Positions 36,045-55,906 of a stretch of 64,000 bases of DNA are shown here, piece after piece. Location of the stretch: the NCBI GenBank assembly GCA_047495785.1, contig JBLDXI010000001.1:310001-374000 (forward strand), in the 5' to 3' direction. The first letter of the stretch is position 1. Each line of letters begins with the position of its first letter. The position numbers and the translations under genes are program-made. Under the pieces are notes generated by a model. That model was not told the origin of the DNA. It saw only the letters and a program-made list of their open reading frames with translations, and made no database searches. The stretch comes from Lepidodermella squamata (lineage: Eukaryota; Animalia; Gastrotricha).

Positions 36045-37121
36045 ATTATTTTTCGATGTAATTTTTTCAACTTGAACGGTTCTCACTTTCGTGAAAATAA
36101 ATGACGATTTTTTTACGGGAAGATGCTTGGGTCTTTCTCAATATCACCGCCGAAGTTCACACCTGGAATACGCATAGCATTGGAATCCAAAAGACGTCGA
36201 GTTATTTGTATGATATTCTTTATTTTCTCGCATATCAATATGTTGACAAAAATTTACATGGAGACGCGCAAATAATGTGTTTGGTTTTTTGTGCACTGTT
36301 GATGCTGTTTGGCTATTATTTACAAAGTTGGGAACAAAAATTTTGCATTCAACAAAAATTTCACGGTTTTGCTCAGTCAGCATATAGAGAGTCATCATCA
36401 TTCATTCATCATAACTTCATAGAATTTTCAAAATTATACAATATAGTTTTGTGCTTGCTTTACAACTTTGTAAATCATCGTCAATTCTGTAAAACAAACC
36501 GTTCTCGATTTTCCATATAAATAAAAATGTAGAAATGCGTTAGGCCGCGACGATGCTCTCTTTTTCAAATATATAGCAAATATTTTTTATGAACAATAAT
36601 ACATCTTTTATTCACAACTTGATCTTTTATTTGCTGAATAGTTGCTTTCGTATCGTACAAAGTCGCGGCGAAGGAGGTGGAGTGAAAAGTTCGAGCGCTG
36701 AAAACTCAGCTGAGAGAAAGAAAAGAAGATGGAACTTTACAAGTTATGCACATTCATCAACAATCATCAACGATTTTATAATAATAGCCAAACACAACTA
36801 ACGTCATGAATAAAACTGGGCTGGAAAGGAATAGAGGGCGCGTTTGCAAAAATGGAAGAAGAGATTTCTTTCGTAATTATATTATCATTTCGAAAAAAAC
36901 AGATCATTCATATCATTTTCTCCACCCCACTCCTATATATCGCCTGTTGATGCGAGAGCGGTTCAAGGTATCAAATGATGACGCATTATCATAAATAGCA
37001 ATAATAATCAATAGAAGTCTTTTAGAATATCCACTAATAATCTTTCTTTGTAAACGCTAAATAAAATGAAACCGTCGTTGTGAAGAAATGAAGAAATAGA
37101 AGAAGCAGTATTTGGCGAGGT

Positions 37122-40100
37122 TTAGCAGCGTCTTGGCACCGACGAGGACTTCTGGGAAGACTCTTCGTCACTGCTCGACGACGATGCTTCTGACGAAGCT
37201 GGCGGGGTGTCAGGGTGCGAAGAGTTTATTGCTTGTGAAGAACATGGCACATTGGGCTTGGCGAGGGAGGAAGGAGAAGTCGAAATTGAAGTCGAAAACG
37301 CAGGCGATGCGTCGGGCGAGCCTGGCAACGGCGCATCAGCAATCACTGGGTCATTTTCTTCTTCAGGTTCTACTTCATCCGCAGAATCGCCCGGTGGCGT
37401 CAACGGCGGCGTCGACGACGGCTGGTGACTGCTGCTCTCGAGCTCGTCTTCGCCATCTTGGCTAGACGAGTCGGAGTACGCATCGCTGTTGCGCCGAGGT
37501 GTTACTTCTTCTCCTTCCCCTTCGTTGTGGACTGTCGCGCTCACTGATGGAATGCTGTTGCTAGACGGGTCCGATTCCAGGGGCACTCGGCGCTGGCCGG
37601 CGGCTCGCTTTGCCGCGGCCGCTCGCCATTGTCGCCACGCCACGAGCACCAATACTGCAAGGCCTGTTGAAGATAGAGAAAATCAAATATAGACATGGTG
37701 AAATGGTGAAAAGTTAAGCGATCAACTTACCTAAGGTAACAATACCCATCCAGGCTATCACTCCGACAGAGACACTGGACAAGGCGGCAGGAGCGCTGGC
37801 TTCAGCGCCATCGGTTTTACCGGCCTTGTCAAGGCCGCGGTCGCCAACTTCGAGTTTGCCGAACCGCGAGTTATTGTTGGCCAAAGTTTGACCGAAGTCC
37901 ATCATTGCTTCTTCAGGGAAGACTGAGTTCTGTAAGATGCAGATGTAGCTGCCGTAGGTGTTGATGCATCGATAGCCGGCGGTGCACGGGAATGATTCGC
38001 ACTCATCGACATCTGTAGGGAGAAGAAAAAAACAAGGTAAAAACGTGAATAACAATATTGTGCAAAGCAAACGTACCGTCGCAGCTATGCATGTTGACGT
38101 TGAGCAAGAAGCCACGTCGGCAGATGCACTCGTAACCATCGGCGCGGCTAGGATTCTCGACGCACTGCTGCTCGCAGAGACCTTGGTAGCGAGCGCAACC
38201 TTGGATCTGTTCGCAAGAGTGCCTGTTCGGCAGCAGTTTGTAGCCGTCGCGGCAAGAGCACAAGTACGAGCCTTCGGTGTCGGTGCACTGGTGCTCGCAG
38301 CCGCCGTTGCGGTCGAGACATTCGTTGACGTTGACGCAGCGAGTGCCGTTCATCGGGCGGTGAATGCCAGGCGCAACTTCGCACGAGCACAAACGGCCAC
38401 GGAAGGTCAAATGGCACGTGACCTTCTCAGCTGGGCAGTCGAGACGACCATCGAGTTGATAACCGTCGCGGCACGTGCAGTAGTAGCCTGGGTAGGCGTT
38501 AAGACAGAGCTGATCGCAATAGCCGTTGTTGGTGCGGCATTCGTTGGTGTCGCTCATGACCTTGGTTAGATCGATGTTAGCAAGACCGCTGCCACCGGGG
38601 CCAGGTGGGCCAGGCGGGCCAGGAGGACCAGCAGGACCTTGTCTACCTGGGCTACCAACCGCGCCAGACTCTCCCTTAGGACCAGCAGGACCAGGGCTTC
38701 CGTTGTTGCCAGGGCGACCGGCAGGGCCTCGAGGGCCGCTGGGACCAGGCGAGCCAGTGTCACCCTTAGGACCAGGATTGCCGGTGGATCCACGGATGCC
38801 ACTTCCACCACGAGGGCCAGGCATGCCCGGTGGTCCAGGAGGACCAGCGATGCCAGGGAGACCTTGAGGACCAGGTCTGCCGTCTTGACCGGGGGATCCC
38901 GGCAAGCCGCGTTGACCTTGGTCACCCTTAACACCAGCGCTGTTGGTACCAGGTTCACCCTTTTCACCACGATCACCGCGATCACCCTTCGAGCCAGGGA
39001 GGCCAGGAATGCCAGCAGGGCCTTGACGGCCTGGAGCACCCATAGCACCGCTCTCACCCTTCTGTCCGCGAACACCAGGTGTGCCAGGTAGACCAGGTTC
39101 TCCTGCGCGACCAGGATCACCAGTAGGACCACGCGGGCCAGGGACAGCTGGAACATTGTTCACGTTTCCAGGTGGGCCAGGGGGACCGGCAGGACCGCGA
39201 AGACCGCGGGCGCCAGACTCACCCTTCTCACCACGAGGGCCAGGAATGCCGACGCCAGGGGCACCTTTAGCTCCACTGGGACCACGTTCACCAGGGCGAC
39301 CTGGTGTACCATTTTGTCCGTCAATACCACGCTCGCCCTTCGGTCCGGCAGGTCCTGGTTGACCATTTTCTCCGGGACGACCATCTCGTCCTTGCTGGCC
39401 AGGTTGGCCGGGTAGACCTTGAGAACCGCGAGGACCGGAAGGACCAGGGTTACCAGGTGATCCAGGTCTGCCAGCTGGGCCTTGAGGTCCACTGCGTCCG
39501 GGTAATCCGGCGATACCAGCAGGCCCAATAGGACCAGGAGGACCGGCTTGACCAGCTTCTCCGCGAGGACCAGGTTGACCAGGTTGGCCAGGTTGTCCGT
39601 CGTTACCAGGGCGACCAGGCGCACCAGGCAAGCCCATTCCAGTAGGACCGCGAGGGCCAGATGGACCAGGGGCACCAGTTCTACCTGACTGTCCAGGTTG
39701 GCCAGCAGGTCCCTGAGGACCGCGAGCTCCGGAGTCACCCTTAGGTCCAGGATTTCCGGCTTGGCCCTTTTGACCAGCAGGGCCAGGTTGACCTGGGAAT
39801 CCTTGCTCACCACGGGGACCAGGGGAACCAGATGGACCACGTGATCCGCTCGCTCCCTTGACACCAGGAAGACCAGCCTCACCCTTCAGACCAGGGATGC
39901 CAGCTTCTCCACGGTCACCCTTCGCGCCGAGAGGGCCAATGGGACCACGTTCGCCAGGCATACCAGGAGTTCCGGCTGGACCAGGCGCACCACGAGCACC
40001 TGATTGACCCTTCGGGCCAGCTTCACCAGGTCTACCTGGGGTACCAGGAACACCTTGATCTCCCTAAAATGGAAAACGGTAATGAACAAATTCAACAAAT

Positions 40101-43100
40101 GCTAAGTGAATCTTTACCTTGACAGAGTCTCCCTTCGGACCGCGTGGACCACTTGGTCCGGGCAATCCAGTACGGCCTGTAGCTCCCTGAAGACCTCTGG
40201 GTCCAGAAGGTCCAGGAACACCAGGAGCACCTGGAGAACCTCGGTCACCAGGGCGACCATCTTGGCCAGGAGCACCAGCAGGTCCACTATTGTAAACAAA
40301 GTTATATATTGAAGCATTCACGAGAAAGTGTTAACGTACCGAATGCCAGATTCACCACGACCTCCACGCTCACCCTTGCTGCCTTGAGGACCCGGTAAAC
40401 CAGGCTGGCCGATGTCACCCTTTTGGCCAGGAACACCAGCAGGGCCACGAGGTCCACTCTCACCATGGGCACCTTTGGGACCAGCTTGTCCGGTTTGGCC
40501 AGTTTGACCAGGTTGACCGCGAGATCCAGAGACACCTTTCTCTCCCTTCGATCCAGGGGCTCCAGGTTGGCCGGCTTGTCCGGTTGGACCTCTGGCTCCG
40601 CTAATGCCTTGTGGGCCGACGGGACCGGGCCTGCCGATTTGACCAGTTTGGCCAGGAGGACCTTGCGGACCGCTGGCACCTGGTCTTCCAGATGGACCAG
40701 GCTGACCAGTCGGACCAACGATAGATCTTCCGTCAGCACCAGGAGCACCGGGGATACCAGCCTCACCCTTTTGGCCTGGGACGCCTGGCATACCACGAGC
40801 ACCAGAGGCGCCAGGTCTGCCAGCTAAACCAGGTGTTCCAGAGGGACCCATTGGGCCGACTGGACCGCGTTCACCGGGTGAGCCAGTATCTCCTCGTCGT
40901 CCAGCCGCTCCGCTCTCTCCCTTAGAACCCTTCGGGCCGACAATACCAGGGACACCCTGAGGACCACGTGCGCCAGACGGTCCTGGCAAGCCAGTAGAAC
41001 CACGAGCGCCGGGTTGACCAGCGGCGCCTGGTTGGCCGTCTAAACCATTGCGACCAGGTTCTCCTTTCATGCCTTGCAGACCAACAGGGCCCTGAGGACC
41101 GCGCGGGCCTGATAAGCCTTGCGCTCCTGGAGCTCCCGTGCGACCAGGTTGACCGGTTTGGCCAGGCACGCCTTGAGGTCCGAGATCACCTTTCTCACCA
41201 CGTTGTCCGGGTTCGCCCTTACGTCCAGGCTCTCCAGTGAAACCGCGGGGGCCAGACAAGCCTGGGACACCACGCATGCCTGGTTCACCCTTGACACCAG
41301 GAGCACCGATGGGTCCAATAGGTCCGAGATCACCCTTTTGGCCTTGCTGACCAGGTAATCCAGGGCGGCCTTGAGGCCCAGAAACACCCATGGGTCCACG
41401 ATCTCCCTTAATACCTGGCTCACCACGTTGACCGGGGAGGCCAGGAATGCCTTGGGCGCCACTTGTTCCGCGATCACCCTTCTGACCAGGTTGTCCGATG
41501 GGGCCTTGAGGACCGAGAGGGCCACGCTCACCACGTTCTCCTTGATCACCCTTGTTGCCTTGGATACCAGGAGTACCAGGGAAACCACGAGGTCCAGAAG
41601 CACCAGGTTGACCAGTTCTACCAGTGATACCTTGTGGGCCTTGGGAGCCAGGTTGACCAGGAACTCCTTGAGGTCCGCGCTCACCAGCTGGGCCAGCAAC
41701 GCCAGGGAAGCCACGAGGACCAGACAAACCGGGGATACCGCGTTCTCCAGTGCGACCTGGCTGACCAGTTTGACCAGGTTGACCTGGATTGCCCTGGTCT
41801 CCCTTGAAACCTTGCGGGCCTTGTTGGCCTGGTTGGCCTGGAACGCCAGTAGGACCACGAGCACCAGATTGACCAGGGATACCACGATCACCCTGATTGC
41901 CCTTAGTTCCTTGAGGTCCTTGAGGTCCAATAGGTCCGAGAGGGCCTTGCGGGCCACGGGCTCCACTGTTGCCTTGCGAGCCTTTAGGACCTTGGATACC
42001 TTGATCGCCCTTAGCTCCGGGACGGCCCTCCGGTCCGATAGGTCCGATGGGGCCACGTTCTCCCTGAGGACCAACGCGACCAGTCTCTCCACGAGCACCG
42101 CTAGCGCCTTTGTCTCCCTTGGAACCAGGGGCACCACGCGCGCCAGAAGTTCCAGGAACACCTTGTTGACCTTTCAGGCCTGTCTGACCAGTGGGGCCAT
42201 CACGACCAGGGACGCCAGCCGGACCTCGAGATCCAGATGTACCCTTGTCGCCCTTTTCGCCAGGTCGGCCTTGTACGCCTTGAATGCCCTGAGTTCCGGG
42301 GGCTCCACGGGGACCAGAGATGCCTATAATAATATTCATGAAATGAGTATCTTCAGAAAATAATCAGCTAATAATCTTACCTGGAGCACCAGTTAGACCA
42401 CGGTCTCCGCGATCACCCTTCGGGCCCATCAAGCCAGGAGCACCAGGCTGACCAGTCAGACCGATCGGGCCTCGAGGACCGGATGGGCCTTGCTGACCAG
42501 TCCTGCCGGTGGGTCCAGCGGGGCCAGGAGTACCAATAGCACCCTTAGCACCAGATCGACCAGGTGCGCCGTCGTTACCGCGATCACCCTTAGCGCCGGG
42601 GACACCGGGCAAGCCGGTTACACCTTGAATGCCGATACCCGGCTGACCACGTTCACCACGAGGTCCGCTAGGGCCGATGGCGCCTCGGTCTCCCTTGATG
42701 CCAGGAACACCCTGTTCACCGTTTCGGCCAGGGACACCTTGATCTCCCTTTGGTCCGATTGGGCCGATTGGTCCGATAGGGCCAGCGATGCCAGGCTGGC
42801 CTCGTTCTCCTTTCGCACCAGATGTACCTTGCGAGCCCTTAGGTCCTTGAACACCAGGGGTACCAGGTCTGCCCGCAGCGCCAGAACGACCATCAGTACC
42901 GCGATCACCCTTCGGGCCTGGAAGACCAGTTTGGCCTCGAGGGCCAGATACACCAGGGACGCCTTGAGTACCTTTCTCGCCAGTTCTTCCTTGAGGACCT
43001 TGAGGACCACTTTGTCCGCGCAAACCAGGAGCACCAATAGGACCCGGCGCACCTGTGATGCCTTGAGGACCGATAGGTCCACGCTCACCATTTCTGCCAG

Positions 43101-46100
43101 GTTCACCAACGCGACCAGTGTCACCAACGTTGCCTTTTTGACCAGGCTGACCAATGGGACCTTGAGGACCGCGAGCTCCGGATACACCCTTCTCACCCGG
43201 AGTGCCGCGATCACCCTTCGCACCGCTGGTACCGCGGGGACCCATAGGACCAATAGGACCGATCGGGCCGAGAGCTCCTTTCTCACCAGGCACACCTGGG
43301 CGGCCTTGGGGACCTTGAGGTCCACTTCTGCCCTGAGGTCCGAGATCACCTTTAGGTCCAGCAACACCAGGGTTACCAGTGGGGCCACGAGGTCCGCTTT
43401 GGCCAGTTGGGCCGCGAACGCCAGGAGTACCAATAGGGCCGATTTCACCCCGGTCTCCCTTAATGCCTTGGATACCAGGAATACCTTGAATGCCTTGTGG
43501 ACCTTGAGGACCGCGAGCGCCCGAATTACCAGGAGAGCCCTTGGGACCGACATTTCCTTGGTCACCTTTAGCACCTTGTTGGCCAGGGATGCCAGGTTGA
43601 CCTTGTGGGCCACGAGCGCCAGACAAGCCAGGGAGACCAGTTTGACCACGTTGACCTGTTTGACCGAATTCACCCTTGTCACCTTTGGTACCAGGAACGC
43701 CCTGGGCTCCAGTGCGGCCGACAGCTCCTTTATCTCCCTTCGGACCGGCAACGCCAGGAATACCTTGAATACCAGGAGTGCCCTGGGGACCACGGGCGCC
43801 AGAAACACCCTGTGATCCGCGTTCACCCTTGTCACCAGGAACACCGCGAGGTCCAGCGGGGCCGGATCTGCCAGGAACACCAATAGGTCCGATGGGACCT
43901 CGCTCACCCTGAGGACCCTGAGGTCCGATTTGTCCGGTGAGACCTTGAGGGCCGGGAAGACCGCGATCGCCAGAATTGCCTTTCACACCACGAGCTCCAG
44001 ATTCGCCCTTTTGACCTCGTTCGCCAGGAATACCAGTGCGACCCTGGTCACCCTTAGCACCCGATGTACCTTGCGGACCTCGAATACCAGGAGCACCTGG
44101 TTGACCAGTGAGACCAATTGGACCGATGGGGCCGATGGGGCCACGTTCGCCAGGAACTCCCGGGACTCCGCGTTCACCCGGAACACCTTGAATACCCGGA
44201 ACACCTCGCGGACCAGATGGGCCTTGCAATCCAGTTCTACCAGGTTCTCCTTTCAAGCCTTGAATGCCGGGGACACCTTGAGGACCACGGGCGCCACTCT
44301 GACCAGGAACACCACGATCTCCTTGGGCTCCTCGATCACCCTTAGAGCCAGGAATACCAGGATTTCCAGTCAAGCCAGGTTGGCCAGGAACACCTTGAGG
44401 ACCTTGAGGTCCGATAGGGCCTCGCGAACCACTAGTTCCGGGAACACCTTGGTTGCCCTTAGCTCCAGGTACACCGATCGGGCCTTGAGGGCCAACCTCA
44501 CCACGGGGACCTTGAGGACCAACAGGCCCAAGAGGACCAATGGGACCCTGTGGGCCTCGCACACCAGAGTTTCCTTGATTTCCTTTGTCTCCCTTAGGAC
44601 CAGCAACACCAGGGGCACCAGTGCGACCGACTGCGCCAGATGTGCCTCGAGGACCGAGGTCTCCTTTGTCACCCTTGGCACCAACTGGACCTTGCTGACC
44701 AGGAACACCGCGGGCTCCGGAAAGACCAGGTGCACCAGTTCGGCCAGTTTGTCCAGGGACACCTTGCGGACCAACTGGTCCCAAGTCACCTTTGTTGCCT
44801 TTCTCTCCAGGTCGGCCTTGAGCTCCACTGGTTCCTTGTGGACCACGAACACCGGGCTCTCCCTTCGAGCCGACAGGTCCCTGAATGCCAGGAACGCCTC
44901 GAGCTCCAGATTGACCAGTTCTACCAGGAACACCGGTAGCTCCCAGATCGCCCTTGCTTCCTTTAGGTCCAGATCGGCCGGGGATGCCAGAATCACCCTG
45001 GTTGCCCTTGATTCCTTGGGGTCCTTGAGGTCCGACGGGGCCAAGAGGTCCGATGTCACCCTTCTGGCCGGTAGGTCCTCGAGCACCGCTAGCTCCGGGG
45101 ATACCAGATCTGCCAGTTGGACCGACAGCGCCAGATCTGCCAGGAACACCTTGGTCACCCTTGGGTCCTTGTCTACCAGTCTCGCCGATGTCACCCTTTT
45201 GACCTTGGTTGCCCTTGTCTCCGGGCAAACCTCGGGCACCAGTAATGCTTCGACCAGGTTGACCGGTTTCACCCTAAGTTCCGGCAAATCAATGTTTTGT
45301 TTCAATAATCATATTAATAATCTTACCTTGACACCTTGGTCACCCTTCTGACCAGTAGGACCAACAAGACCTGGGCGACCAGCTGCTCCAGATGTACCTG
45401 GAACGCCTCTATCACCTTTAGGACCAGCAACACCTTGATCACCCTTGTTGCCTTTAGCCCCGCTGACACCAGGTCGACCAGTCAAACCAGTCGGGCCGAA
45501 TTCGCCCTTTGGACCAACAGGTCCTTGCAAACCAGTTGGGCCCATTGGACCTGAAAGACAAGAATAAGGATTAAAACAAATAGCCGCAAAAAATAATTGT
45601 TAAGCGTACCTCGAGCGCCGGAGTTTCCTTGTTGTCCCTTGGGTCCAGCAATGCCAGGGGCACCAATTGGGCCGATTTCACCTTTCTGACCCTTGATGCC
45701 AGTTCCAGCGGCACCGCGAGCACCAGGTTGACCAGGAGCACCAGTCGGACCCATTGGTCCAATCGGACCACGGGATCCGGAGGTACCAGGCAGGCCAGTT
45801 AAACCAGTGAAACCTCGGTCACCCTTAGGGCCTTGAGCTCCAGACGTGCCTCTGGGACCAAGGTCACCCTTGTTGCCTTTCTCGCCAGGCGCTCCAATAG
45901 GACCAGGTTGACCAGTTCGGCCAGTTTGGCCTTCCGGACCGCGCTCACCAATCGGACCTTGGGGTCCACGAGGGCCAGAGTTGCCTTGCCTGCCAGGAAT
46001 GCCAGACACACCGGGGACACCTTGGTCTCCCTTGGTGCCTTGAATACCGCGCGGGCCACTGACACCTTGAGGGCCTCGCTCGCCAGGAACACCACGGTCG

Positions 46101-49100
46101 CCTTGGTTGCCCTTGATACCTTGCGGTCCAATATCACCACGATCGCCTTTAGGTCCGATGTCACCTTTAGCACCACGAGCACCAGAAACGCCGGGGAATC
46201 CACGGTCTCCTTGGTTTCCTTTAATACCCTGTAGACCAGGAACGCCAGTAACACCTTGGTCGCCCTTGATGCCTTGAATGCCATTGTCGCCTTTTTGGCC
46301 CTTAGCGCCAGACGCACCACGTTGTCCGGTCAGACCAGTGGGACCTCGAGCTCCAGATTGGCCAGTGATACCTGGTCGTCCGGTTTGACCAGGGACGCCA
46401 ACGTCACCCTTGAGACCACGAGCACCTGATGCGCCAACGTTGCCTTTTTGACCTTCAGGGCCACGGAGACCTGTCGGTCCCTGGTCACCCTTAGGACCGA
46501 CGATACCAGGCATACCCCGAGGGCCAGAAACACCCGGAAGTCCAGGCAAACCAGTAGGGCCGCGGGTACCATCAATACCAGGGACACCACGTTCACCAGG
46601 GACACCTGGGACACCTTGGTTTCCTTTGTCGCCCTTGATGCCAGTACCACTTCGACCAGTTGCACCGACAGGACCAACGGGACCACGTTCGCCTTGAGGA
46701 CCGCGCTCTCCTGGAACGCCACGAGCGCCAGAGGTACCAGGAACACCACGATCACCTTTCGTGCCTTGGATGCCAGGGACACCAGTAGGGCCTTGGACAC
46801 CTGGGACACCTCGTGCTCCAGATTGACCGGGCCTGCCGTCGTTTCCGCTGTTACCCTTGTCACCCTTGAAGCCTTGCGGACCCTGCGGACCAATTGGGCC
46901 GATCGGACCACGAGCTCCACTGTTACCTTGTGGGCCCTGGGGTCCACGGTCACCTTGATTGCCCTTAGGTCCAATGGCACCAGACCTACCAGGCATGCCA
47001 GGCATACCGGTTGGACCAACAGGACCGACTTGACCAGTTCGACCAAGGTCTCCCTTTTCGCCAGTGTCTCCCTTGTTACCCTTTTCACCTGGGCGGCCAA
47101 TAGGACCTTGGGCACCTGATGTTCCACGGTCACCCTTCAGACCTTGTGGGCCAATTGGGCCGATTGGACCGATCGGGCCTCGAGGACCAACTTCACCAAT
47201 AGGACCACGAGCACCCGAGGAGCCGACGTTGCCCTTGTCACCCTTAATACCAGGGGCGCCAGTGAGACCAGTTTGACCAAGAGAGCCTTTAGGTCCGCTA
47301 ACGCCACGTTCTCCCTTTTGGCCAGGGAGACCAGTAATACCGCGTGGGCCAGAAGTACCCTGAGGACCACGGATGCCTGGCTCTCCTTTTTCGCCAGTGA
47401 AACCGCGGTCACCCTTCTGTCCGATTACCGTTTGACCAGGAGTACCCGGAATACCGGCAGGACCAGGCAGACCAGCGTCACCCTTAGTACCCTTGGGGCC
47501 GATAGCTCCACTGCGTCCAGGAATACCTGGGACTCCAGCATCACCCTTGATACCTTGGGGGCCTCGTTCACCAGTAATACCGGGTTGGCCATTGATGCCA
47601 GGGCGACCAGTCGGACCAATAGGACCAGAAGTACCTCGAGGTCCAATGTCTCCCTTGTCTCCCTTCGAGCCACGAGCGCCAGAGTTGCCTGGAGCACCTT
47701 TCGGACCAGCGGCACCGTCGCGGCCATCTTTGCCGGGAACACCCTGAGCGCCAGTGGATCCGGGGCGGCCTGGCAGACCAGTTCGACCAGTGTCACCAGT
47801 GTTGCCTTTGTCGCCCTTGTTACCGAGGTCGCCTTTGGGTCCTTGCATGCCGCGGGGGCCGGAGACGCCAGGCGCGCCAGTTCTACCAGGTACACCTTGA
47901 ATACCAGGCTCACCAGTGCGACCAACCTCGCCCTTAACACCTCGGGGGCCAGAAACACCCTGAGGGCCGATATTGCCAGTAGGACCACGCGGGCCGAGTT
48001 CGCCTTGAGGACCACGTTCACCAGGAACGCCTCGAGCTCCGGAGTTACCTGGACGACCTGGGACACCTTGGTCTCCCTTGTCACCCTTCGAGCCGACCAA
48101 GCCTTGAGGACCAGGCTGACCAGTAAAGCCGCGCGGACCCGATGGACCAAGTGGGCCACGCTCGCCAGGAATACCGCGATCCCCTTTCTCTCCCCGAGCT
48201 CCAGAGCGGCCTGGTACACCGTCGCGTCCAGAGGCACCAAGATCACCTTTGTTGCCTTTGTCTCCATTTGCTCCCCGTGGGCCAGCAGCTCCAGATGGGC
48301 CTCGAGGACCAATAGGGCCCTGAATACCAGGGGTACCTTGAGGACCTCTCTCGCCGGGAACACCACGAGCTCCTGAGATACCAGGAACGCCTCGGTCACC
48401 CTTGGGGCCGATTGGGCCGAGTTCTCCAGGACGACCTGTGTTACCAACTTCACCCTTTTGGCCGCGAGCACCAGATTGACCAGTAGGACCTCGTGGTCCA
48501 AGGTCACCTTTGTCTCCCTTGATACCAGGTTGACCAGGTTGACCAGTGGCACCAGTGCGGCCAGACCGACCGGGCTGGCCAGTTTGACCTTCACGGCCTG
48601 TCTGTCCGGTTAAACCAGTGATACCTCGTGGTCCGGAAATACCAGGAACACCTCGTTCACCAACGTTACCCTTTTCACCAGGGCGTCCGACGGCACCAGT
48701 AGGACCAACACGGCCTGGAACTCCTTGATCTCCTTTGTCGCCCTTAGAACCGATCGATCCCTTGGCACCCGATTGGCCAGGCGCTCCACGAGGACCCTGG
48801 AGACCAGTCTCGCCGGGGCGACCGTTGATTCCAGGAACACCAGTTAGACCACGCTCGCCAGGGATACCTTGAGAGCCTTTCGGTCCGCTGACACCAGGTC
48901 GGCCAGTGAGACCAGGAACGCCTCGTTCTCCGATTGGGCCTTGCTCACCAGGACGGCCAGGAATACCGGTTGGGCCTTGGATACCTGGTTGGCCAGGAAC
49001 ACCGCGAGCACCAGAAATGCCAGGAACACCGCGATCACCTTGATTGCCTTTATCGCCCTTGGAGCCGGGTACACCAGGATTACCGATCGGACCAGTGTTA

Positions 49101-52100
49101 CCGCGACCTCCCTTGTCTCCTTTTTCACCGCGAGGTCCACCAATACCGGGTTGACCGGTGGGGCCTCGTGAGCCAGAAATGCCAGGTACACCACGATCAC
49201 CTTGGTTGCCCTTAATGCCGGGGACGCCTTGGTCGCCCTTGAGACCGCGAGGTCCTGAAATACCAGGAACACCTTGAGGACCTTGAGGACCACGCAGGCC
49301 AGTTTCACCAGGGCGGCCGACTTCTCCAGGTCGACCAGGTTGTCCAGTCATACCAGGAACACCAGGTACTCCAGTGAGACCAGTTGGGCCACGGGGTCCA
49401 GAAATGCCTTGACGACCTGGAACACCCTGTTCGCCTTGGTCACCCTTTGAGCCTCGGTCTCCCTTCAAGCCGACAGGACCGGTAAGACCAGGACGGCCAG
49501 GAATACCATTCGGGCCGGGCACGCCTTGGTCTCCCTTGGGACCAATGGGACCACGCTCGCCAATTGGACCTCGCTCGCCAGGCTGTCCAGTCAAGCCCGG
49601 TCTGCCTTGAGGACCAACGGCACCAGATGCTCCGCGATCACCCTTGTCACCTTTCACGGTCAGACCTGGGACACCACGCTCACCGGCATCACCCTTGGGG
49701 CCTCGAGCGCCTGAGTTACCAGTCGGACCACGTGGGCCAACAGGTCCTAGATCACCCTTCAGGCCTTGTGGGCCACGAGAGCCAGAGATACCCTGAATAC
49801 CAGGTTGGCCTTGCGATCCCTTGGGGCCAGCAGCTCCAGATCTGCCGGGTTGGCCAGTTGGGCCTTGAGCTCCATCACGACCAGGCTCTCCACGATCGCC
49901 CTTAATACCGATACCAGGAGCGCCTCGAGCGCCGGATGAACCAGGCTGGCCAGTTTGTCCACGGTCACCCTTCGGACCCACAATACCTTGAGGTCCTTGA
50001 TCACCTTTCGCACCAGGCACACCAGGACGGCCAATCGGACCTGACGGACCGGCACGTCCAGGAACTCCAGTAGGACCAATAGGACCTTGGGGACCGAAAT
50101 CTCCTTTATTGCCTTTCGGGCCAACAGCGCCAGAAGTACCAGGGCGGCCAGGAACACCTTGATCGCCCTTGGGACCGATAGGTCCTTGAGGGCCAACTTC
50201 TCCCGGTCTACCATTCAAACCAGGCACGCCTTGATCACCCTTGCCACCCTTGGCACCAGATGTTCCTTGAGGGCCACGTTGACCAGGCACACCTGAAGCA
50301 CCAGTGCGACCAGTTGGGCCACGAGGACCGACGTCACCAGGCCTGCCCGCAACACCAATGTCACCTTTATCACCCTTGACACCTCGTGCGCCGCTAATAC
50401 CAGGAGCTCCGTTGTTACCCTTGGGGCCGATTGGGCCAACTGGACCCAAGTCACCTTGTCTACCTTTCTCGCCAGGTCGACCTTGAGCACCAGTAGCACC
50501 CTTCTGTCCGAGGTCACCCTTTGCTCCTTTCGCTCCCGAAGTTCCCGGAGCGCCACGCTGTCCAGGAACGCCTTGTTCGCCAGGGCGACCGGGAACACCT
50601 TGGTCTCCTTTGTTTCCTTGATCTCCTTTCAGACCGATTGGGCCGATAGGGCCACGAGCTCCAGAAGCGCCAGGAACACCAGGCCTGCCCTCTCTACCAG
50701 TCTCACCAGTTGGGCCTTGACGACCCGGTTGGCCTGGTGTGCCGAGATCACCCTTAGGCCCAACGGGACCTCGGGCGCCAGAAGGACCTTGGATACCAGG
50801 GCTACCAGTTCTACCGGTCGCGCCTTGCGGGCCAGATCTGCCTGGAATACCGGTGATACCTTGCGGACCAGGAAGGCCAGGAACACCTCTGTCACCAGAT
50901 TGACCGGTGAGGCCAGGTACACCACGATCTCCCTTGGGGCCGGTAGCGCCGCGCTGGCCAGGATTGCCAGGAGTTCCGTCACGGCCAGAAGGGCCAGTCC
51001 TACCAGTTTGTCCTCGAGGTCCGACTTGTCCAGTCAGACCCTGTGGACCGATGGGACCAATTGGGCCAAGTGGTCCGCGCTCGCCAGGAATGCCTTGATC
51101 GCCCCTGTTTCCCTTAGGACCGAGTGCGCCTGAGGTGCCAGGGCGCCCAGGAACACCTTGTTCTCCAGGACGTCCAGGAATACCTTGGTCTCCCTTGTCA
51201 CCCTTTGATCCATCACGGCCAGGAACTCCCTGAATGCCTTGTTCTCCTTTCCTGCCAACAGCGCCGGATGTGCCAGGACGTCCAGTAGCGCCAGGGACAC
51301 CAGGAGTACCAGTAGGTCCACGAGCACCTGAAGTACCTGGAACACCAGGCTGTCCACGGTCACCAGGTCGACCAGCCAAGCCGGTTTCGCCGGGAACTCC
51401 TCGGTCACCTTTGGGACCAACTGGGCCGATTTGACCAGTAGCACCACGAGCACCAGAATTGCCAGGAATGCCAGTGGCACCAGGGCGGCCAGGAATACCC
51501 GAGACACCCTGAGGTCCTTGCGGACCAGTGCCGCCGCGCTGTCCACGATCACCCTTATCACCTTGATTTCCTTTCTCGCCAGGAACACCGCGAAGACCTT
51601 GAGGGCCCTGAGGACCACTTTGACCTCTTTGGCCAGGGACACCAGGTGCTCCGTTAATGCCAGGGACACCACGCTCACCAGTTGGGCCGCGAACGCCAGA
51701 ATTGCCTTGGTTTCCCTTGATGCCAGGAACACCTTGATCACCCTTCTGACCTGTCAGACCTTGAGGCCCGCGGGCGCCAGAGTTGCCAGGGTTTCCAGTG
51801 CGACCAGGAGCGCCAGTGTTGCCTTGATTACCTTTCGGACCAGATGCACCAGGTCGCCCAGTTGGGCCGAGGGGTCCTTGAATGCCAGGGACACCGCGCT
51901 CGCCTTGAGGACCAGGGGCACCGTCTCTACCGGGTACGCCAGCTCTGCCTGTTTCTCCAGTGAAGCCACGAGGACCGGATGCACCAATTCTGCCCGGTTC
52001 GCCAGGTCGACCAGGATTACCCAAGTCTCCCTTCTCACCAGGAATGCCAGGTCGGCCGATTTCACCTTGTGGGCCTCGTGGACCGACAGGGCCGATGGGG

Positions 52101-55100
52101 CCCATAGGACCAGTAATGCCGCGTCCAGGAATACCAGCTTGTCCAGTAAGACCGGTTGGGCCAGGTAAGCCTGGAACACCGCGTTCACCCTGAATGCCTT
52201 GCGGGCCGGGGCGACCCGTCGGTCCGATAGGACCAGATACACCAGGAATGCCACGGGGGCCTTGAATACCGGCATCTCCTTTCGAACCTGGAGCGCCATC
52301 TCGGCCGGGCTGGCCGGGGCGTCCAGCCTCTCCAGTCAGACCGCGAGAACCGCTGTTACCAGTGGGACCTTGGCGGCCAGGAACGCCGGCAACACCTTCA
52401 AGACAGGATAAATAAACTCAAGTCAAAATTTAAGAAATAATATTTTCTTACCTTGATCGCCCTTAGGACCTTGCGGACCAATGGCACCTCGGGGACCAGA
52501 GCGGCCAGGGACACCGGGGGCGCCAGTGTCTCCGACCTCACCCTTTCGACCAGGAATGCCGGATGCTCCGGTGCGGCCAGGCTTGCCTTCAGCACCAGGA
52601 GCTCCAGGACGGCCAGGTACACCAGCTGCTCCGGGGGTGCCGGGAATTCCACTCGCTCCTGTCTGTCCTTTTCGCCCTGGAATGCCAGCGAGGCCAGGCT
52701 CGCCTTGATCTCCCTTAGCACCATTCACGCCAGGAGTACCATCTTGGCCGGGGAATCCACGCTCGCCAGTCGGACCAGGCAAGCCTCGATCACCTTTCGG
52801 GCCGCCAACGCCTTGCGGACCCTGGGGACCGATAGGACCAGAGAATCCACGTTGGCCAGGTTGGCCAGGTTGGCCAGGTTGGCCGGGAACGCCGGCACTG
52901 CCTTTCGGACCAGTGCGACCTTGAATTCCTTGTGGACCCGGATTGCCTGTGAGACCTTGCACACCCGGCTGACCTGGGTTACCAGGACGGCCATCGTTTC
53001 CAGCATCACCTTTCTGTCCTTGAATTCCGGGGCGTCCCGGAATACCAGTTGGGCCAGGAGGACCTTGTGGGCCAACAATCGAATCACCAGGGCGACCTTG
53101 ATTACCCTGAGCACCAGTTTGACCTTGTCTACCAGGAACACCAGGATTGCCGGTTTGGCCTGGTGCGCCAATTGAACCAGGGCTTCCGCGGTCGCCTTTC
53201 GGACCGCCAGGACCAGTCATGCCTCGCGGACCAACAGCGCCTGGTAGGCCTCGGAGACCCGGAGAGCCCGGAGCGCCAGCTTGACCAGACGCACCAGTTC
53301 TTCCGTCACGTCCAGTGTTACCACGGTCACCTTTATCTCCGGGCAATCCGGGAAGGCCAGGGTTACCAGGAGCGCCGACGCGGCCAGGTTGTCCAGCCAT
53401 TCCAATATCTCCCTTTTGACCGGGTTGGCCAGGCATTCCAGCCGGGCCTGCAGGTCCAGTGCGACCAACCGCGCCTAAAACGAATCGTATTTTTACATAT
53501 ACCTATGAAGTTTTTAATCCAGCAACATACCTTGACGACCAGGTTGGCCGATTTCACCAGTTGGACCGGGGCGGCCTTGTTGTCCGGGTTCGCCGCGAGG
53601 GCCAGGGCCGCCTACAGCGCCCGTTTGACCTCGCAAGCCACGCGGGCCCTGAGCTCCTGGACTGCCAGGAGCGCCAGGGGCACCACCGTCACCTTTCTCG
53701 CCTCGAGCTCCAGTTCTACCCGGAAGACCGTTTGTGCCAGGAGTTCCGCGATCACCACGGTCACCCTTGCTGCCCGGAGTACCAGGAACGCCAGTTTGGC
53801 CTTGAAGACCGCGAGATCCTGATATTGAGGAAAACATATATTTAAGACTTTCTTAATAAAAATTATTGGGCCACAAACCTGTCGCGCCTGGAATGCCAGG
53901 AGAGCCAGTAGCGCCAGGGCGACCAGGTGTACCAGGGACACCAGCAACACCAGGCTCGCCAGTGCGGCCAGGAGTGCCAGGGAAGCCAGAGACACCAGGC
54001 AAGCCCCGAGAACCAGTTGATCCAGGAGGGCCGGCTGGGCCTCGTTCTCCACTAGGTCCGCGTTCGCCATTTCTACCAGGAACACCTGCAGCGCCAGGAA
54101 TTCCAGGATTGCCTCGATCGCCAGGAGGTCCGGCAGAGCCAGTTCGTCCGGCTGGACCAGGCGGTCCTGCCCTTCCGGGGGTTCCGGGCGAGCCAGGATT
54201 GCCAGGGACACCTGCTGTACCTGGCCTTCCGGCAGGGCCTGTGCTACCACGATCACCAGGGACACCAGGCCTGCCGGGCACGCCTGCTTGTCCTGTAGAG
54301 CCAGTCGATCCACGAACACCCGGAAAACCCGGGGATCCTGCATCACCCTTTGGTCCGCGGTCACCTAACAAGTAATGGCGTAAAAAATGCTAAAAAATGA
54401 CATGTGGGTAAACAAACCAGGCCGGCCAGGTTCTCCGTCGCGCCCAGGGGGACCGGGACGGCCAGTGGGACCTGGAAGACCAGTTGGACCGGTTGGGCCG
54501 GGTAGGCCACCTCGGCTGCCACCGGATCCAGGAGGGCCGGGTGGGCCAGGAGGGCCAGGAATCGCTGTTAACAAGAAACATAATTGCGAATTAGCCAAAA
54601 ATAATTAAAAATTGAATAAATCCCGTCACAATTTCACAGCGTAAACAAAGCACTTTAATTAGGGTATAAGTTAATCGTCATTATATGGATAAAATTCGGA
54701 CACGCAAAATTAATGGTCTATAAAATCCCAAGTAAAACGACTAATAACAATTATTAGTCGTAAATCCACAAGCAAAAAAATAAAAAATCGAGGTATCAGG
54801 GTAAACTGATTAATTCATCATAAGGCCAAAGCACCCGATACGGAGCAAATCTGTGATACCGAAGTAGTGATCAACATGATGGCGCGGCTTCGCAGACTGG
54901 CTACGCGTTGTAGCTGTTTGAATCTGACGCTTTTCACGTTTTTCCGCTGCTATGACCGAGCTATTAGCTTGGTCTATTTCTTCAAATTGGCAATTCAAAT
55001 TCGAAACAAATTAATAAACGATAAAAATTGCGTAACAAAAGTATTCCTACTACAACGAAACATGGAAATCCTGGGTGAGTAAACGTACCGGTATCAATAG

Positions 55101-55906
55101 CGACACCGACTGAATGCCGATAATTAGGCTTGAATTCTGCGAATTGAAGTGTCTTGCCAACTTCCGGTAGCGAGTCAGTTTCAAAGAAGGTATGAATGTA
55201 TTCCGGGTAGTCACGCGCTACTTCGTGACTGATCGGGTCAATGCCTTCTTCGTAAGTCCAACCAAAGTAAGAGACTGCGTAAATAAGAGGCCGGTCTGGT
55301 ACATCAAACTATAATTGGCGAAGAAATCAAGTAGAAAAGTCGTCACTTTTTTAACCTGGAAAAAACTTACAATGTACTGACCGCCTTGCCTAGGTAAGAC
55401 AACCGGGTACTCGTAAACGAGTTGCAATGTGGAGGAAGACGACACATTTGCTACCGGCCGCCATATTTGAAAACGCACTCTCGTTGGTCGAGGGCTGTCT
55501 GGATGGACGTAACACAGGAATTTGGCAAGAATACCCGTCACAAGCGGGAACTCGCGATTCAACCAAGTACGCCGTTGTGTGTCGGGATTTGTGTAACGTC
55601 GCTGTTTAATTTCAGCTCGTGCAGGGTAAAAAATTAAAGAGCCGACTGTCTCATCTAAATTAACGAAAAAAGTAATCAATTAGCTGGAATAATTCGAATT
55701 TTCTCCAGCTTACTAAAAAATCTCGGGGAAGTGGTCGAGGAATCTTCTTGAGCTGTTGTTCCTGCGACGAGGAACAGTATCGATGCGATTCCAGCGAAAA
55801 GTATTATTCCGAAATTAGGCCGCAGCGAAAAGGCCGATACAAATGACGCTCCAGGTAATGACGGCGCCTTTGTAGGCAGCAGGTGTCGCTGACGGCGGCT
55901 GCTCAT
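37122..55906 (-). CDS. Giant type I transmembrane collagen (~5,800 aa): signal peptide, novel N-terminal domain, ~5,100 aa Gly-X-Y, ~5 EGF/cbEGF modules, TM helix, acidic Ser-rich tail
   Basis: About 15 coding exons joined by GT-AG introns that continue the Gly-X-Y reading: ~55906-55712, 55655-55370, 55309-55089, 54564-54419, 54364-53879, 53821-53531, 53475-52452, 52395-45610, 45551-45327, 45274-42380, 42324-40339, 40288-40117, 40063-38076, 38012-37731, 37663-37122. EGF motifs include [28 protein letters not shown] and [10 protein letters not shown]. The TM helix [28 protein letters not shown] is split by intron 37664-37730. Confidence 0.9.

What the first reader, a model, noticed from the sequence alone, without database searches (positions are those of the whole stretch)
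37122..38640. No canonical trimerisation domain: (GPP)n cap, EGF array, TM helix and signalling-like tail
The helix ends in [18 protein letters not shown] and runs directly into EGF/cbEGF modules, a short linker, a TM helix and an acidic Ser/Pro-rich tail (RRNS kinase-type site; ends ...VPRRC). Established: collagen helices normally nucleate from a trimerising domain and zip C to N. Inference: membrane anchoring and the EGF array may register the three chains, and the ectodomain may be shed at the juxtamembrane linker. The tail could couple matrix tension to the cytoskeleton.
Basis: partly seen in the sequence, partly recalled or inferred. Interest (0 to 1): 0.7.

Follow-up and report, generated by a model that had tools for sequence, protein, structure and literature searches.

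The report
Membrane anchor of a giant collagen
This stretch encodes the expressed tail end of a roughly 1.5-micrometre collagen rod that is anchored in the cell membrane the opposite way round from every described membrane collagen, and the same unstudied anchoring cassette occurs in worms, molluscs and a brachiopod.

Summary
On the minus strand the helix ends in [18 protein letters not shown] (38640-38585). It runs into EGF-type modules, a 55-residue stalk, a TM helix split by an intron, and a 170-residue acidic Ser/Pro-rich tail ending VPRRC. A spliced, mismatch-free transcript contig confirms both C-terminal introns, so the TM exon is used.

- **No known trimerisation domain.** Pfam finds no COLFI, C4/NC1 or C1q domain and I found no coiled coil. 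The N-terminal globular domain models as a lectin-like jelly roll.
- **Not an orphan.** The cassette (helix, cbEGF array, truncated 4-Cys cbEGF, stalk, TM motif G-[LV]-I-x-W-x-x-I-x-[ST], tail) recurs in uncharacterised proteins of Owenia, Tubulanus, Haliotis, Pinctada and Lingula. It also recurs in a short paralogue in this genome and in a second giant (at least 3,836 aa) from another sample. All full-length members checked are type I, whereas described membrane collagens are type II.
- **The (GPP)3 cap is mirrored.** An identical cap sits at the N-terminal end: 14 of 17 GPP triplets lie in the outer 5% at each end of 1,699 triplets.

Registration by the cassette is plausible because it is the only shared non-collagen part, but it is untested. 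I found no evidence for shedding or for cytoskeletal coupling. The scan noted this same gene before, on this same DNA.

The parts
38585..38640 (-). C-terminal end of the collagen helix: [18 protein letters not shown], the (GPP)3 cap
   Evidence: The GPP statistics are: triplets 1695-1697 of 1,699.
38540..38584 (-). 15-residue junction ([15 protein letters not shown]) between the helix and the first EGF Cys. It ends in the Ca-binding-type DTNEC signature.
   Evidence: Relatives have equally short junctions of 4-16 residues.
38435..38539 (-). EGF module 1 (6 Cys, C-x-N-x4-Y-x-C site)
   Evidence: Pfam EGF_3/FXa_inhibition; motif scan
38336..38434 (-). 4-Cys module (C...C-x-C...NGT-x-C) with a conserved N-glycosylation sequon
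   Evidence: Read. The same module is in P0014 (twice) and P0019.
38213..38335 (-). Calcium-binding EGF ([15 protein letters not shown] hydroxylation consensus)
   Evidence: Pfam EGF_CA/FXa_inhibition/cEGF, best stretch 105-143. The closest solved relatives are the LDLR/LRP4 EGF pairs.
38078..38212 (-). EGF module 4 (6 Cys), plus the last codon (Asp) before the splice donor
38013..38076 (-). Intron, 64 nt, GT..AG, phase 1
   Evidence: Removed in the contigs of X1 (0 mismatches) and of X2 (table 5)
37939..38012 (-). Truncated calcium-binding EGF with only 4 Cys (DVDEC...C...C-I-N-T-x-G-S-Y-x-C). This is a family hallmark.
   Evidence: Pfam EGF_CA 2.3e-5, matching only part of the profile (2-29/43). 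C, C, N, T, G, S, C are invariant in the six-sequence alignment A4.
37774..37938 (-). 55-residue juxtamembrane stalk: Gly/Asn/Ala-rich, one NNS sequon, no furin or dibasic site
   Evidence: No heptad window. In relative X2 about 97 exon letters here (the membrane-side part of the stalk and the first half of the TM helix) are replaced by 100 unalignable letters, an in-frame difference.
37731..37773 (-). First half of the TM helix ([14 protein letters not shown] + split Gly), carrying the conserved [10 protein letters not shown] motif
   Evidence: The X7 relative keeps [10 protein letters not shown] with 7 synonymous changes and no amino-acid change (my reading, table 7).
37664..37730 (-). Intron, 67 nt, GT..AG, phase 1, inside the TM helix. 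If retained, the frame stops after ...VTLGKLIA.
   Evidence: Removed in the X1 contig. The read-through stop is seen in ORF 37714-38139.
37635..37663 (-). Second half of the TM helix (LAVLVLVAW)
37125..37634 (-). Cytoplasmic tail, 170 aa. It has a basic stop-transfer stretch (+5 in the first 20 residues) and then an acidic Ser/Pro-rich part, with RRNS, 6 CK2-type sites and 7 S/T-P sites. It ends VPRRC.
   Evidence: Single copy in the genome. 27 of 40 listed differences to relative X7 fall on third codon positions, and RRNS is kept through synonymous Arg changes (my reading, table 3).
37122..37124 (-). Stop codon (TAA)
38641..54562 (-). Rest of the collagen helix: about 5,150 residues and 1,699 triplets in 10 exons, with short breaks of 1-7 residues and no Cys. 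An N-terminal (GPP)3 sits at about 54556. The nine introns inside this part are predicted, not checked with RNA.
55090..55906 (-). Signal peptide exon (55906-55714) and two exons of the N-terminal lectin-like jelly-roll domain (55652-55356 and 55308-55090), which abuts the helix directly
   Evidence: The fold was modelled on the Owenia homologue.

Best explanation
The stretch encodes the membrane-anchoring C-terminal cassette of a giant type I transmembrane collagen. The protein has a signal peptide, a lectin-like jelly-roll head, and about 1,699 Gly-X-Y triplets. That helix would be about 1.46 micrometres long at the textbook rise of 0.286 nm per residue.

The cassette runs in this order:
- the helix end, with a (GPP)3 cap;
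- a 15-residue junction ending in a calcium-binding EGF signature;
- EGF, 4-Cys module, cbEGF, EGF;
- a truncated 4-Cys cbEGF;
- a flexible 55-residue stalk;
- a TM helix with a conserved G-[LV]-I-x-W-x-x-I-x-[ST] face;
- a disordered acidic cytoplasmic tail.

**Shown.** The cassette is real, transcribed and spliced as predicted. It is the hallmark of an uncharacterised family of type I membrane collagens in several spiralian phyla.

**Inferred.** The protein is a homotrimer, because no second giant chain with this cassette exists in the genome. The three chains are brought together and roughly registered by the cassette in the ER membrane: three cbEGF modules sit directly on the helix end, and the conserved TM helices lie side by side. 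The (GPP)3 runs at both ends act as clamps or nucleation sites. The rod then holds the lectin-like head far from the cell surface, like a scavenger receptor or collectin built in the opposite orientation. The tail is a phosphorylatable, fast-evolving disordered region of unknown partner.

My confidence that the identity and family assignment are right is about 0.85. My confidence that the cassette is the registering device is about 0.35.
For: **Sequence and domains.**

**Spliced transcripts.**. The X1 contig has 0 mismatches and both introns removed. X2 shares the first junction. X7 keeps the TM peptide [10 protein letters not shown] with 7 synonymous and 0 non-synonymous changes.

**Family members with the same cassette.**
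- P0029 (Owenia), P0006 (Pinctada), P0034 (Lingula), P0014 and P0019.
- P0040 and P0042 (Tubulanus) and P0049 (Haliotis).
- A short paralogue in this genome, L014.
- A second giant, L002: one open frame of 3,836 aa with 1,147 triplets.

**Type I topology.** Signal peptides at the N-termini of P0029, P0034 and P0049, and a basic stretch after the TM helix.

**The cassette is the only shared non-collagen part.** P0034 has no N-domain. L014 and P0019 carry other domains instead.

**No known trimerisation domain.**

**GPP caps at both ends.**

**Homotrimer.** The tail is single copy, and the best own-genome match to the EGF array is the short paralogue.
Against: - The TM helix is separated from the helix end by about 200 residues of EGF modules and a flexible 55-residue stalk. 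It cannot by itself set a one-residue stagger.
- EGF modules of this type (the closest solved are LDLR, LRP4 and thrombomodulin) are not known to trimerise.
- P0019 has F instead of the conserved W in the TM motif.
- The N-terminal end carries an equal (GPP)3, and several relatives have their GPP-rich triplets at the helix start. Nucleation at the N-terminal end is therefore at least as easy to argue.
- The giant homologue L002 has no GPP triplet at all, so the cap is not a family requirement.
- No binding or folding test succeeded. The single-sequence model of the EGF array was poor, at pLDDT 41.
- The nine introns inside the helix, and with them the exact helix length, are predictions.
Confidence: 0.6

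Rival explanations
1. Folding starts at the far (N-terminal) end. The lectin-like N-domain and/or the N-terminal (GPP)3 bring three nascent chains together, and the helix zips N to C while the 5,500-residue chains are still being made. The C-terminal cassette would then serve only as anchor and spacer.
For: - (GPP)3 forms the very first three triplets, directly after the N-domain with no linker.
- Owenia, Lingula, the short paralogue L014 and Tubulanus P0042 also start their helices with GPP-rich triplets.
- Type II membrane collagens fold N to C from a juxtamembrane coiled coil (PMC4678570). Direction is therefore not fixed in collagens.
- The structural neighbours of the jelly-roll include phage capsid, baseplate and tail proteins.
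Against: - The N-domain is absent from Lingula P0034 and replaced by other domains in L014 and P0019.
- It occurs in tandem arrays of up to 7-12 copies, alone as a small secreted protein in this genome, and on a tyrosine kinase and a PAN protein. That is the behaviour of a binding module, not of a dedicated trimeriser.
- No C1q or TNF chain is among the 50 best rows of the full-PDB alignment search; Foldseek listed only weak TNF/C1q-family matches, TM-score about 0.2-0.3.
- L002 has no GPP triplet at all.
Confidence: 0.3
2. The membrane-bound form is only a precursor. The ectodomain is cut off at the stalk and the 1.5-micrometre rods become part of an extracellular fibre or surface layer. This would parallel shed MACITs and the membrane-bound C. 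elegans cuticle collagens. It is compatible with either folding model.
For: - The stalk is long, flexible and fast-evolving. It cannot be aligned in the ~91% identical relative X2, though it stays in frame.
- Shedding is the rule for known membrane collagens and is proposed for nematode cuticle collagens (PMC7848082, PMC10538796).
- The helix is very regular and free of Cys.
Against: - The stalk has no furin (R-x-K/R-R) or dibasic site, and no conserved cleavage motif in the family alignment.
- The TM helix and the membrane-near part of the tail are under strong purifying selection. That argues for a function of the anchored form.
- There are no protein data.
Confidence: 0.25
3. The TM helix and tail are a gene-model artefact or a minor isoform. 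The main product would stop before the TM exon (intron retention gives ...VTLGKLIA-stop) and be a secreted collagen.
For: Retention of the 67-nt intron would truncate the protein within the TM helix. Assembled contigs drop rare variants, so a minor retained form cannot be excluded.
Against: - The only X1 contig over the region is fully spliced with 0 mismatches.
- X2 and X7, from other species, are spliced as well.
- The TM peptide is conserved through synonymous changes.
- The same C-terminal TM helix is present in every family member that has a complete C-terminus.
Confidence: 0.03

Closest known systems
MACIT and other type II membrane collagens (collagens XIII, XVII, XXIII, XXV; C. elegans COL-99)
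   Same: A single-pass membrane anchor, a collagenous ectodomain and a short cytoplasmic domain. The anchored trimer projects a collagen rod from the cell surface.
   Different: MACITs are type II: the N-terminus is cytosolic and the TM helix comes first. They trimerise through a juxtamembrane coiled coil, have interrupted helices, and are shed at furin or ADAM sites (PMC4678570, PMC7848082). Here there is a signal peptide and a C-terminal TM helix (type I), an EGF array instead of a coiled coil, no furin site, and a helix about ten times longer.
Class A scavenger receptors and membrane collectins (SR-A, MARCO, COLEC12). NCBI's automatic name for Lingula P0034 is 'macrophage receptor MARCO'.
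   Same: The functional layout: a membrane anchor, a collagen stalk and a distal recognition domain. The head here is a lectin/CBM-like jelly roll.
   Different: Those proteins are type II, with SRCR or C-type lectin heads at the C-terminus and often an alpha-helical coiled coil (PMC7848082 states that they are all type II). There is no SRCR or CTLD domain here. The orientation is reversed and there is an EGF base.
CCBE1 (collagen and calcium-binding EGF domains 1)
   Same: The same Pfam domain set: Collagen, EGF_CA, cEGF, FXa_inhibition. It is the nearest named cluster in the ESM Atlas (score 0.75, a lead only). Insect CCBE1-like proteins appear among the hits.
   Different: From my own knowledge, CCBE1 is a small secreted protein with the EGF modules before two short collagen repeats and no TM helix. 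Here the order is collagen then EGF, followed by a TM helix and a tail.
Membrane-bound C. elegans cuticle collagens
   Same: Collagens without a large trimerisation domain that start life anchored in the membrane (PMC10538796).
   Different: They are type II, about 300 residues long, carry Cys knots and are cleaved at an N-terminal furin site. Here the protein is type I, has no Cys in the helix, no furin site, and about 5,150 helix residues.
Giant annelid cuticle collagens (from my own knowledge, not tested here)
   Same: Micrometre-long triple helices in spiralian animals. Thr is frequent in the Y position in the giant homologue L002.
   Different: As far as I know those are described as secreted matrix molecules from protein chemistry. 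I found no paper giving them a C-terminal EGF-TM cassette.

Membership tests
Uncharacterised spiralian 'collagen - EGF array - truncated cbEGF - TM' family (P0029, P0006, P0034, P0040, P0042, P0049, P0014, P0019) | The helix is followed within about 4-16 residues by the first Cys of an EGF array | tested here: met
   15 residues in the window gene and 4-12 in eight relatives
Uncharacterised spiralian 'collagen - EGF array - truncated cbEGF - TM' family | The last module is a truncated cbEGF with 4 Cys (D-x-[DN]-E-C ... C ... C-x-N-T-x-G-S-x-x-C) running straight into the stalk | tested here: met
   Alignment A4: C, C, N, T, G, S, C are invariant in 6 sequences. The module is also seen in P0040, P0042, P0049 and L014.
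Uncharacterised spiralian 'collagen - EGF array - truncated cbEGF - TM' family | C-terminal TM helix starting with G/A-[LV]-I-x-W-x-x-I-x-[ST], then basic residues. Type I topology with an N-terminal signal peptide. | tested here: met
   - Window: [10 protein letters not shown].
- The motif was found by pattern in 9 relatives. W is present in 8, and P0019 has F.
- The window gene's signal-peptide exon is at 55906-55714.
- The signal peptides were judged by reading, not with a predictor.
Uncharacterised spiralian 'collagen - EGF array - truncated cbEGF - TM' family | N-terminal jelly-roll domain with the L/F-Q-I-W-R-P strand (present in most members, not all) | tested here: met
   Alignments A1, A2 and A5. 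The profile search recovers P0029 at 4e-79, P0006 at 4e-71, P0040 at 7e-31 and P0042 at 2.5e-20.
MACIT / type II membrane collagens | Type II topology (cytosolic N-terminus, N-terminal TM helix) | tested here: not met
   The hydrophobic N-terminus aligns with the cleavable signal peptide of the secreted paralogue. The TM helix is C-terminal, with basic residues after it.
MACIT / type II membrane collagens | Juxtamembrane coiled coil that drives trimerisation | tested here: not met
   No Pro-free heptad window of 21 residues in the stalk or any other non-collagen segment. This was a crude scan, not MARCOIL.
MACIT / type II membrane collagens | Furin-type shedding site next to the first collagen domain | tested here: not met
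   No R-x-[KR]-R and no dibasic site in the stalk
Fibrillar collagens | C-propeptide (COLFI) that selects and registers the chains | tested here: not met
   No COLFI hit in any exon at E up to 1-5
Collagen IV and C1q/TNF-type collagens | NC1 (C4) or globular C1q domain at the C-terminus | tested here: not met
   No Pfam hit. The fold of the only globular domain is lectin/CBM-like, with no C1q or TNF chain among the 50 best rows of the full-PDB alignment search; Foldseek listed only weak TNF/C1q-family matches, TM-score about 0.2-0.3.
CCBE1 | Secreted protein with EGF modules N-terminal to the collagen repeats and no TM helix | tested here: not met
   The order here is collagen then EGF, followed by a TM helix and a tail
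Class A scavenger receptors (the database name MARCO given to P0034) | Type II topology and a C-terminal SRCR domain | tested here: not met
   The Pfam scan of P0034 shows only Collagen and EGF families, with a signal peptide and a C-terminal TM helix

The most novel reading that the evidence does not exclude
The conserved cassette (three calcium-binding EGF modules seated directly on the helix end, a truncated cbEGF and a sequence-conserved TM helix) is a new kind of collagen chain-association device. It would work from the membrane in type I orientation, and it would suffice to assemble rods from 40 nm up to 1.5 micrometres. The anchored giant rod would then act as a long-range surface tether or sensor whose tail reports to the cell interior.
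Probability: 0.25. Interest if true: 0.8.

Novelty: new variant of a known kind. Interest (0 to 1): 0.62.

Why it matters
Reviews state that all known membrane collagens and collagen-like membrane proteins are type II and trimerise through a coiled coil next to the membrane (PMC4678570, PMC7848082). This gene, and the family it belongs to, shows the mirror-image design: the head is at the N-terminus, and an EGF base, TM helix and tail are at the C-terminus. The design is conserved across annelids, nemerteans, molluscs, a brachiopod and this animal, and every database entry is 'uncharacterised' or mis-named.

The family gives a natural series from helices of about 75-180 residues to more than 5,000 residues on one and the same anchor. 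That series is a direct handle on two open questions. The first is how a triple helix is nucleated and registered without a COLFI, NC1, C1q or coiled-coil domain. The second is whether helix folding can run from either end. Practically, it also corrects misleading automatic names such as MARCO and CCBE1-like.

Tried and rejected
- **Homotrimer prediction of the N-domain** (Owenia P0029:22-192, three copies). Verdict 'no answer', score 0.00. It is not evidence either way.
- **AlphaFold2 of the window's EGF array without an alignment**. pLDDT 41, unusable, so not searched.
- **Word search with the Owenia N-domain**. It found only itself. This is why the costly exhaustive profile search was run.
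- **Word search for giant relatives with the L002 cassette**, length window 2,110-6,713 aa. It was swamped by fibrillins and no collagen-containing protein was among the 120 listed. It says nothing about whether giant relatives exist.
- **ESM Atlas look-ups**. Leads only: a lectin-like fold for the N-domain, and CCBE1 as the nearest named cluster at 0.75.
- **Literature searches** for a type I or C-terminally anchored collagen with EGF modules. None described it. The library lacks most subscription journals, so absence is weak evidence.
- **First call to search the own genome with the EGF array**. It failed on a frame slip and was corrected.
- **Region downstream of the second N-domain locus.** I looked for a second giant collagen there. 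There is none; it is a small secreted protein made only of the N-domain.
- **Gene-model artefact or processed pseudogene.** Considered and rejected on the RNA evidence.
- **Heterotrimer with a second giant chain.** Considered and rejected.
- **Not done.** The TM helix (exons B and C) and the window's own N-domain (two exons) were therefore analysed exon by exon or through intact homologues.
Full report
**What is there**

The window carries one large minus-strand gene from about 55906 to 37122. It stands out by composition: G+C is 0.58-0.62 against about 0.44 in the flanks. The open frames are almost pure Gly-X-Y. The finding covers the 3' end of this gene.

Read from the sequence, the last large exon ends the helix with [18 protein letters not shown] at 38640-38585. 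After that come:
- fifteen residues ending in DTNEC;
- an EGF module;
- a 4-Cys module ending NGT-x-C;
- a calcium-binding EGF ([15 protein letters not shown]);
- a fourth EGF.

A 64-nt GT..AG intron (38076-38013) follows. The next exon encodes:
- a truncated calcium-binding EGF with only four Cys;
- a 55-residue Gly/Asn/Ala-rich stalk;
- the first half of a hydrophobic helix.

A 67-nt intron (37730-37664) follows. The last exon encodes:
- the second half of the helix;
- the basic stretch [16 protein letters not shown];
- an acidic Ser/Pro-rich tail of 170 residues in all, ending VPRRC.

Pfam confirms the EGF families: FXa_inhibition 1e-24, cEGF, EGF_CA and EGF_3. It finds nothing in the tail.

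The tail has net charge -16 and is 41% Ser+Thr+Pro. It has one basophilic-kinase-type site (RRNS), six CK2-type sites and seven Ser/Thr-Pro sites. It has no tyrosine-based, dileucine, NPxY or PPxY motif.

**Is it expressed as modelled**

Run X1 holds a 3,948-nt contig that matches the window without a single mismatch and lacks exactly the two predicted introns (tables 5 and 8). This is a spliced transcript that joins collagen, EGF array, TM helix and tail.

A relative about 91% identical (X2) shares the first junction. At the second junction, 97 exon letters of the stalk are replaced by 100 letters that do not align. This is an in-frame difference in a fast-evolving stalk.

A relative about 87% identical in a biofilm metatranscriptome (X7) runs from the tail into a loose end. 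Reverse-complemented, that end reads [10 protein letters not shown]. This is the same peptide as in the window across the TM intron, with seven synonymous differences and no amino-acid change (my reading, table 7).

In the tail, 27 of the 40 listed X7 differences fall on third codon positions. Both Arg codons of RRNS differ synonymously (my reading of table 3).

So the TM exon is used in three taxa, and the TM helix and the membrane-near part of the tail are under purifying selection. Contigs cannot exclude a rare intron-retaining isoform, which would stop at ...VTLGKLIA.

**The whole protein**

I linked the open frames through the shortest AT-rich GT..AG introns that keep the frame and the Gly register. 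This gives ten helix exons with introns of 53-60 nt. These nine introns are predictions.

Counted exon by exon, the helix has about 5,150 residues and 1,699 triplets, with no Cys and only short breaks of 1-7 residues. At the textbook rise of 0.286 nm per residue that is about 1.46 micrometres.

Upstream lie a signal-peptide exon and two exons of a globular domain of about 185 residues, which abuts the first triplets directly. With a C-terminal TM helix followed by basic residues, the topology is type I.

**The cap**

Only 17 of the 1,699 triplets are GPP. Seven lie in the first twentieth of the helix and seven in the last. None lies in the central three quarters.

(GPP)3 occurs exactly twice, at triplets 0-2 and 1695-1697. 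None of 20,000 shuffles of the triplets gave this.

**Is there a hidden trimerisation domain**

- No exon matches COLFI, C4/NC1, C1q or any other Pfam family apart from Collagen and the EGF families.
- A crude heptad scan finds no Pro-free 21-residue window with a coiled-coil pattern in the 15-residue junction, the stalk, the N-domain exons or the tail.

The only globular domain is the N-terminal one. It has no Pfam family and the word search found nothing, so I ran the exhaustive profile search. It found 76 proteins at E up to 1e-3.

An AlphaFold2 model of the Owenia homologue's domain, built on a 27-row alignment, has pLDDT 84.9. It is a jelly-roll sandwich. Its best solved neighbours are:
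- the lectin-like domain of Clostridioides Cwp84 (Z 12.4);
- phage capsid, baseplate and tail proteins (Z 9.4-11.6);
- carbohydrate-esterase N-terminal domains (Z 8.7-9.6), and further down CBM32-type carbohydrate-binding modules and F-type lectins (Z about 6-7).

No C1q or TNF chain is among the 50 best rows of the full-PDB alignment search; Foldseek listed only weak TNF/C1q-family matches, TM-score about 0.2-0.3.

The domain occurs in many contexts:
- seven and four times in tandem in two Tubulanus proteins;
- in arrays without collagen in a hemichordate and a gastropod;
- on a tyrosine kinase, a PAN protein and a VWA-collagen protein;
- alone as a small secreted protein elsewhere in this genome.

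This is the behaviour of a binding module. A three-copy complex prediction gave no answer and counts for nothing. The statement 'no canonical trimerisation domain' therefore holds, with the caveat that a jelly roll could still trimerise.

**The cassette defines a family**

A word search with the EGF array found mostly fibrillin- and SCUBE-like proteins. It also found proteins that combine Collagen and EGF domains. Read in full, Owenia P0029, Pinctada P0006, Lingula P0034, the metagenomic P0019 and the Logan protein P0014 share the following layout:
- a helix;
- 4-12 residues;
- an EGF array beginning with a calcium-binding signature (DTDEC, DTNEC);
- a truncated cbEGF with four Cys (C, C, N, T, G, S, C invariant in alignment A4);
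- a stalk of 27-70 residues;
- a TM helix;
- a short tail.

The profile search added Tubulanus P0040 and P0042 and Haliotis P0049, which have the same C-terminus.

The start of the TM helix is conserved across phyla:
- [10 protein letters not shown] (window)
- GLLIWAGILT (Owenia)
- SLIIWLIILT (Lingula)
- GLILWLVLLT (Haliotis)
- ALIVWAILLS and GLIAWLIAIS (Tubulanus)
- AVVIWLTIIS (Pinctada)
- GVTAWAAIMT (P0014)
- P0019 has F in place of W.

This genome also has a short paralogue on another contig (L014). It has the same order of parts, the TM start GLIIWLIILS, and different domains upstream.

P0014 is the end of a single open frame of 3,836 residues on a Logan contig. That frame has 1,147 triplets, one break, G+C 0.69 and no GPP triplet at all. 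Giant versions therefore exist in at least two quite different organisms.

The members whose N-terminus I read (Owenia P0029, Lingula P0034, Haliotis P0049) start with a signal peptide, so they are type I. Databases call these proteins 'uncharacterized', 'EGF-like domain-containing' or, for Lingula, 'MARCO'.

**How it most likely works**

*Shown.* This is an expressed type I membrane protein with a micrometre-long collagen ectodomain, a lectin-like head at the far end, and a conserved EGF-TM base.

*Inferred: homotrimer.* The tail is single copy, and the only own-genome relative of the EGF array is the short paralogue.

*Inferred: association through the cassette.* Chain association most likely depends on the cassette, for four reasons:
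- It is the only non-collagen part common to all members. Lingula has no N-domain, and L014 and P0019 carry other domains.
- The first cbEGF sits within a few residues of the helix end in every member, so three calcium sites would cluster at the end of the triple helix.
- The TM helix is conserved in sequence, which single-pass anchors usually are not.
- Tethering in the ER membrane raises the local concentration of chains.

*Against this.* The TM helix is too far from the helix end (about 200 residues of EGF modules plus a flexible stalk) to set the one-residue stagger. EGF modules of this type (the closest solved are LDLR, LRP4 and thrombomodulin) are not known trimerisers.

*The rival.* Nucleation at the N-terminal (GPP)3, possibly co-translational, is supported by the mirror cap and by GPP-rich helix starts in several relatives. 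I rate it nearly as likely. The two are not exclusive.

*Shedding.* This is possible by analogy with MACITs and nematode cuticle collagens (PMC7848082, PMC10538796). Nothing in the sequence supports it: the stalk has no furin or dibasic site.

*The tail.* It does not align across the family, apart from a short S-D-x-Y-S-D match with Owenia that could be chance. Its role in signalling or cytoskeletal coupling remains a guess.

**Comparison with the known**

Reviews state that MACITs, collagen XVII, ectodysplasin, colmedins and class A scavenger receptors are all type II. They also state that a juxtamembrane coiled coil assists trimerisation (PMC4678570, PMC7848082).

Five full-text searches found no description of a type I, C-terminally anchored collagen with an EGF base. 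The library misses most subscription journals, so this is weak evidence of absence.

I therefore file the gene as a new variant of a known kind, membrane-anchored collagens. It is a member of an unnamed family that is present in public databases but undescribed.

**Limits**

- The nine helix introns, the start codon and the signal-peptide cleavage are predictions.
Other agents of this scan guess a rotifer, and I did not test that.
- Contig-level RNA evidence cannot give isoform ratios.
- Earlier notes of this scan on the same window (s1-407457 and s1-407796) describe the same gene and its N-domain. The scan has seen this gene before on the same DNA.

Noticed in passing
window 54530-54562 (-) and the whole helix 38585-54562: The N-terminal end of the helix starts with its own (GPP)3, directly after the globular domain. 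GPP triplets are absent from the central three quarters of the 1,699 triplets: 7 lie in the first twentieth and 7 in the last.
   Followed up: yes
L007:7912-8616 (-) = G000:C1 about 2326411-2327115: A two-exon gene encodes a small secreted protein made only of a signal peptide plus the same jelly-roll domain. It is 66% identical to the giant collagen's N-domain exon. No collagen follows it within 38 kb downstream.
   Followed up: partly
L014:325-2049 (-) = G000:C3 about 3797756-3799480: A short paralogue of the anchoring cassette. It has a short collagen stretch (a 78-codon open frame) starting [19 protein letters not shown] modules, the truncated 4-Cys cbEGF, the TM start GLIIWLIILS and a tail of about 40 residues. 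Other domains lie upstream that I did not identify, including a D-N-D-C-D-G-type Cys-rich stretch.
   Followed up: partly
L002:2-11509 (+), Logan contig of SRR17902662: A second giant collagen with the same C-terminal cassette. It is one open frame of 3,836 aa, open at the 5' end, with 1,147 triplets and a single break. Ala fills 45% of X positions and Thr 24% of Y positions. There is no GPP triplet, and G+C is 0.69. The organism is unknown.
   Followed up: partly
P0052, P0051, P0047, P0044, P0046 (hits): The unnamed jelly-roll domain is a mobile extracellular module. It is found on a tyrosine-kinase protein (Pfam kinase domain; I did not check for a TM helix), with PAN domains, with VWA plus collagen, and in collagen-free tandem arrays in a hemichordate and a gastropod. 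No Pfam family covers it.
   Followed up: partly
P0034:301-321 (Lingula): Unlike the window gene, the Lingula member has a 21-residue Pro-free stretch with a heptad pattern in its juxtamembrane stalk (AYIQQLLVTADSLTAQAQQIQ). This is a possible short coiled coil.
   Followed up: no
window helix exons 38590-54562 (-): The helix holds 15 G-x-P-G-E-R motifs (7 of them GVPGER) and 6 RGD. These resemble integrin-recognition motifs of vertebrate collagens. Their relevance in this animal is unknown.
   Followed up: no
window about 36285-37121 (-): The spliced X1 contig continues at least about 840 nt past the stop codon, and there is no AATAAA in the first 250 nt. Either the 3' UTR is very long or the contig runs into a downstream gene. 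Another note of this scan proposes trans-spliced operons in this genome.
   Followed up: no
window 38151-38500, run X5 (table 8): The run of 'organism C' holds both a 250-nt contig identical to the window's EGF region and a contig with 20 differences in 158 nt. Two related sources or alleles are therefore in one sample.
   Followed up: no
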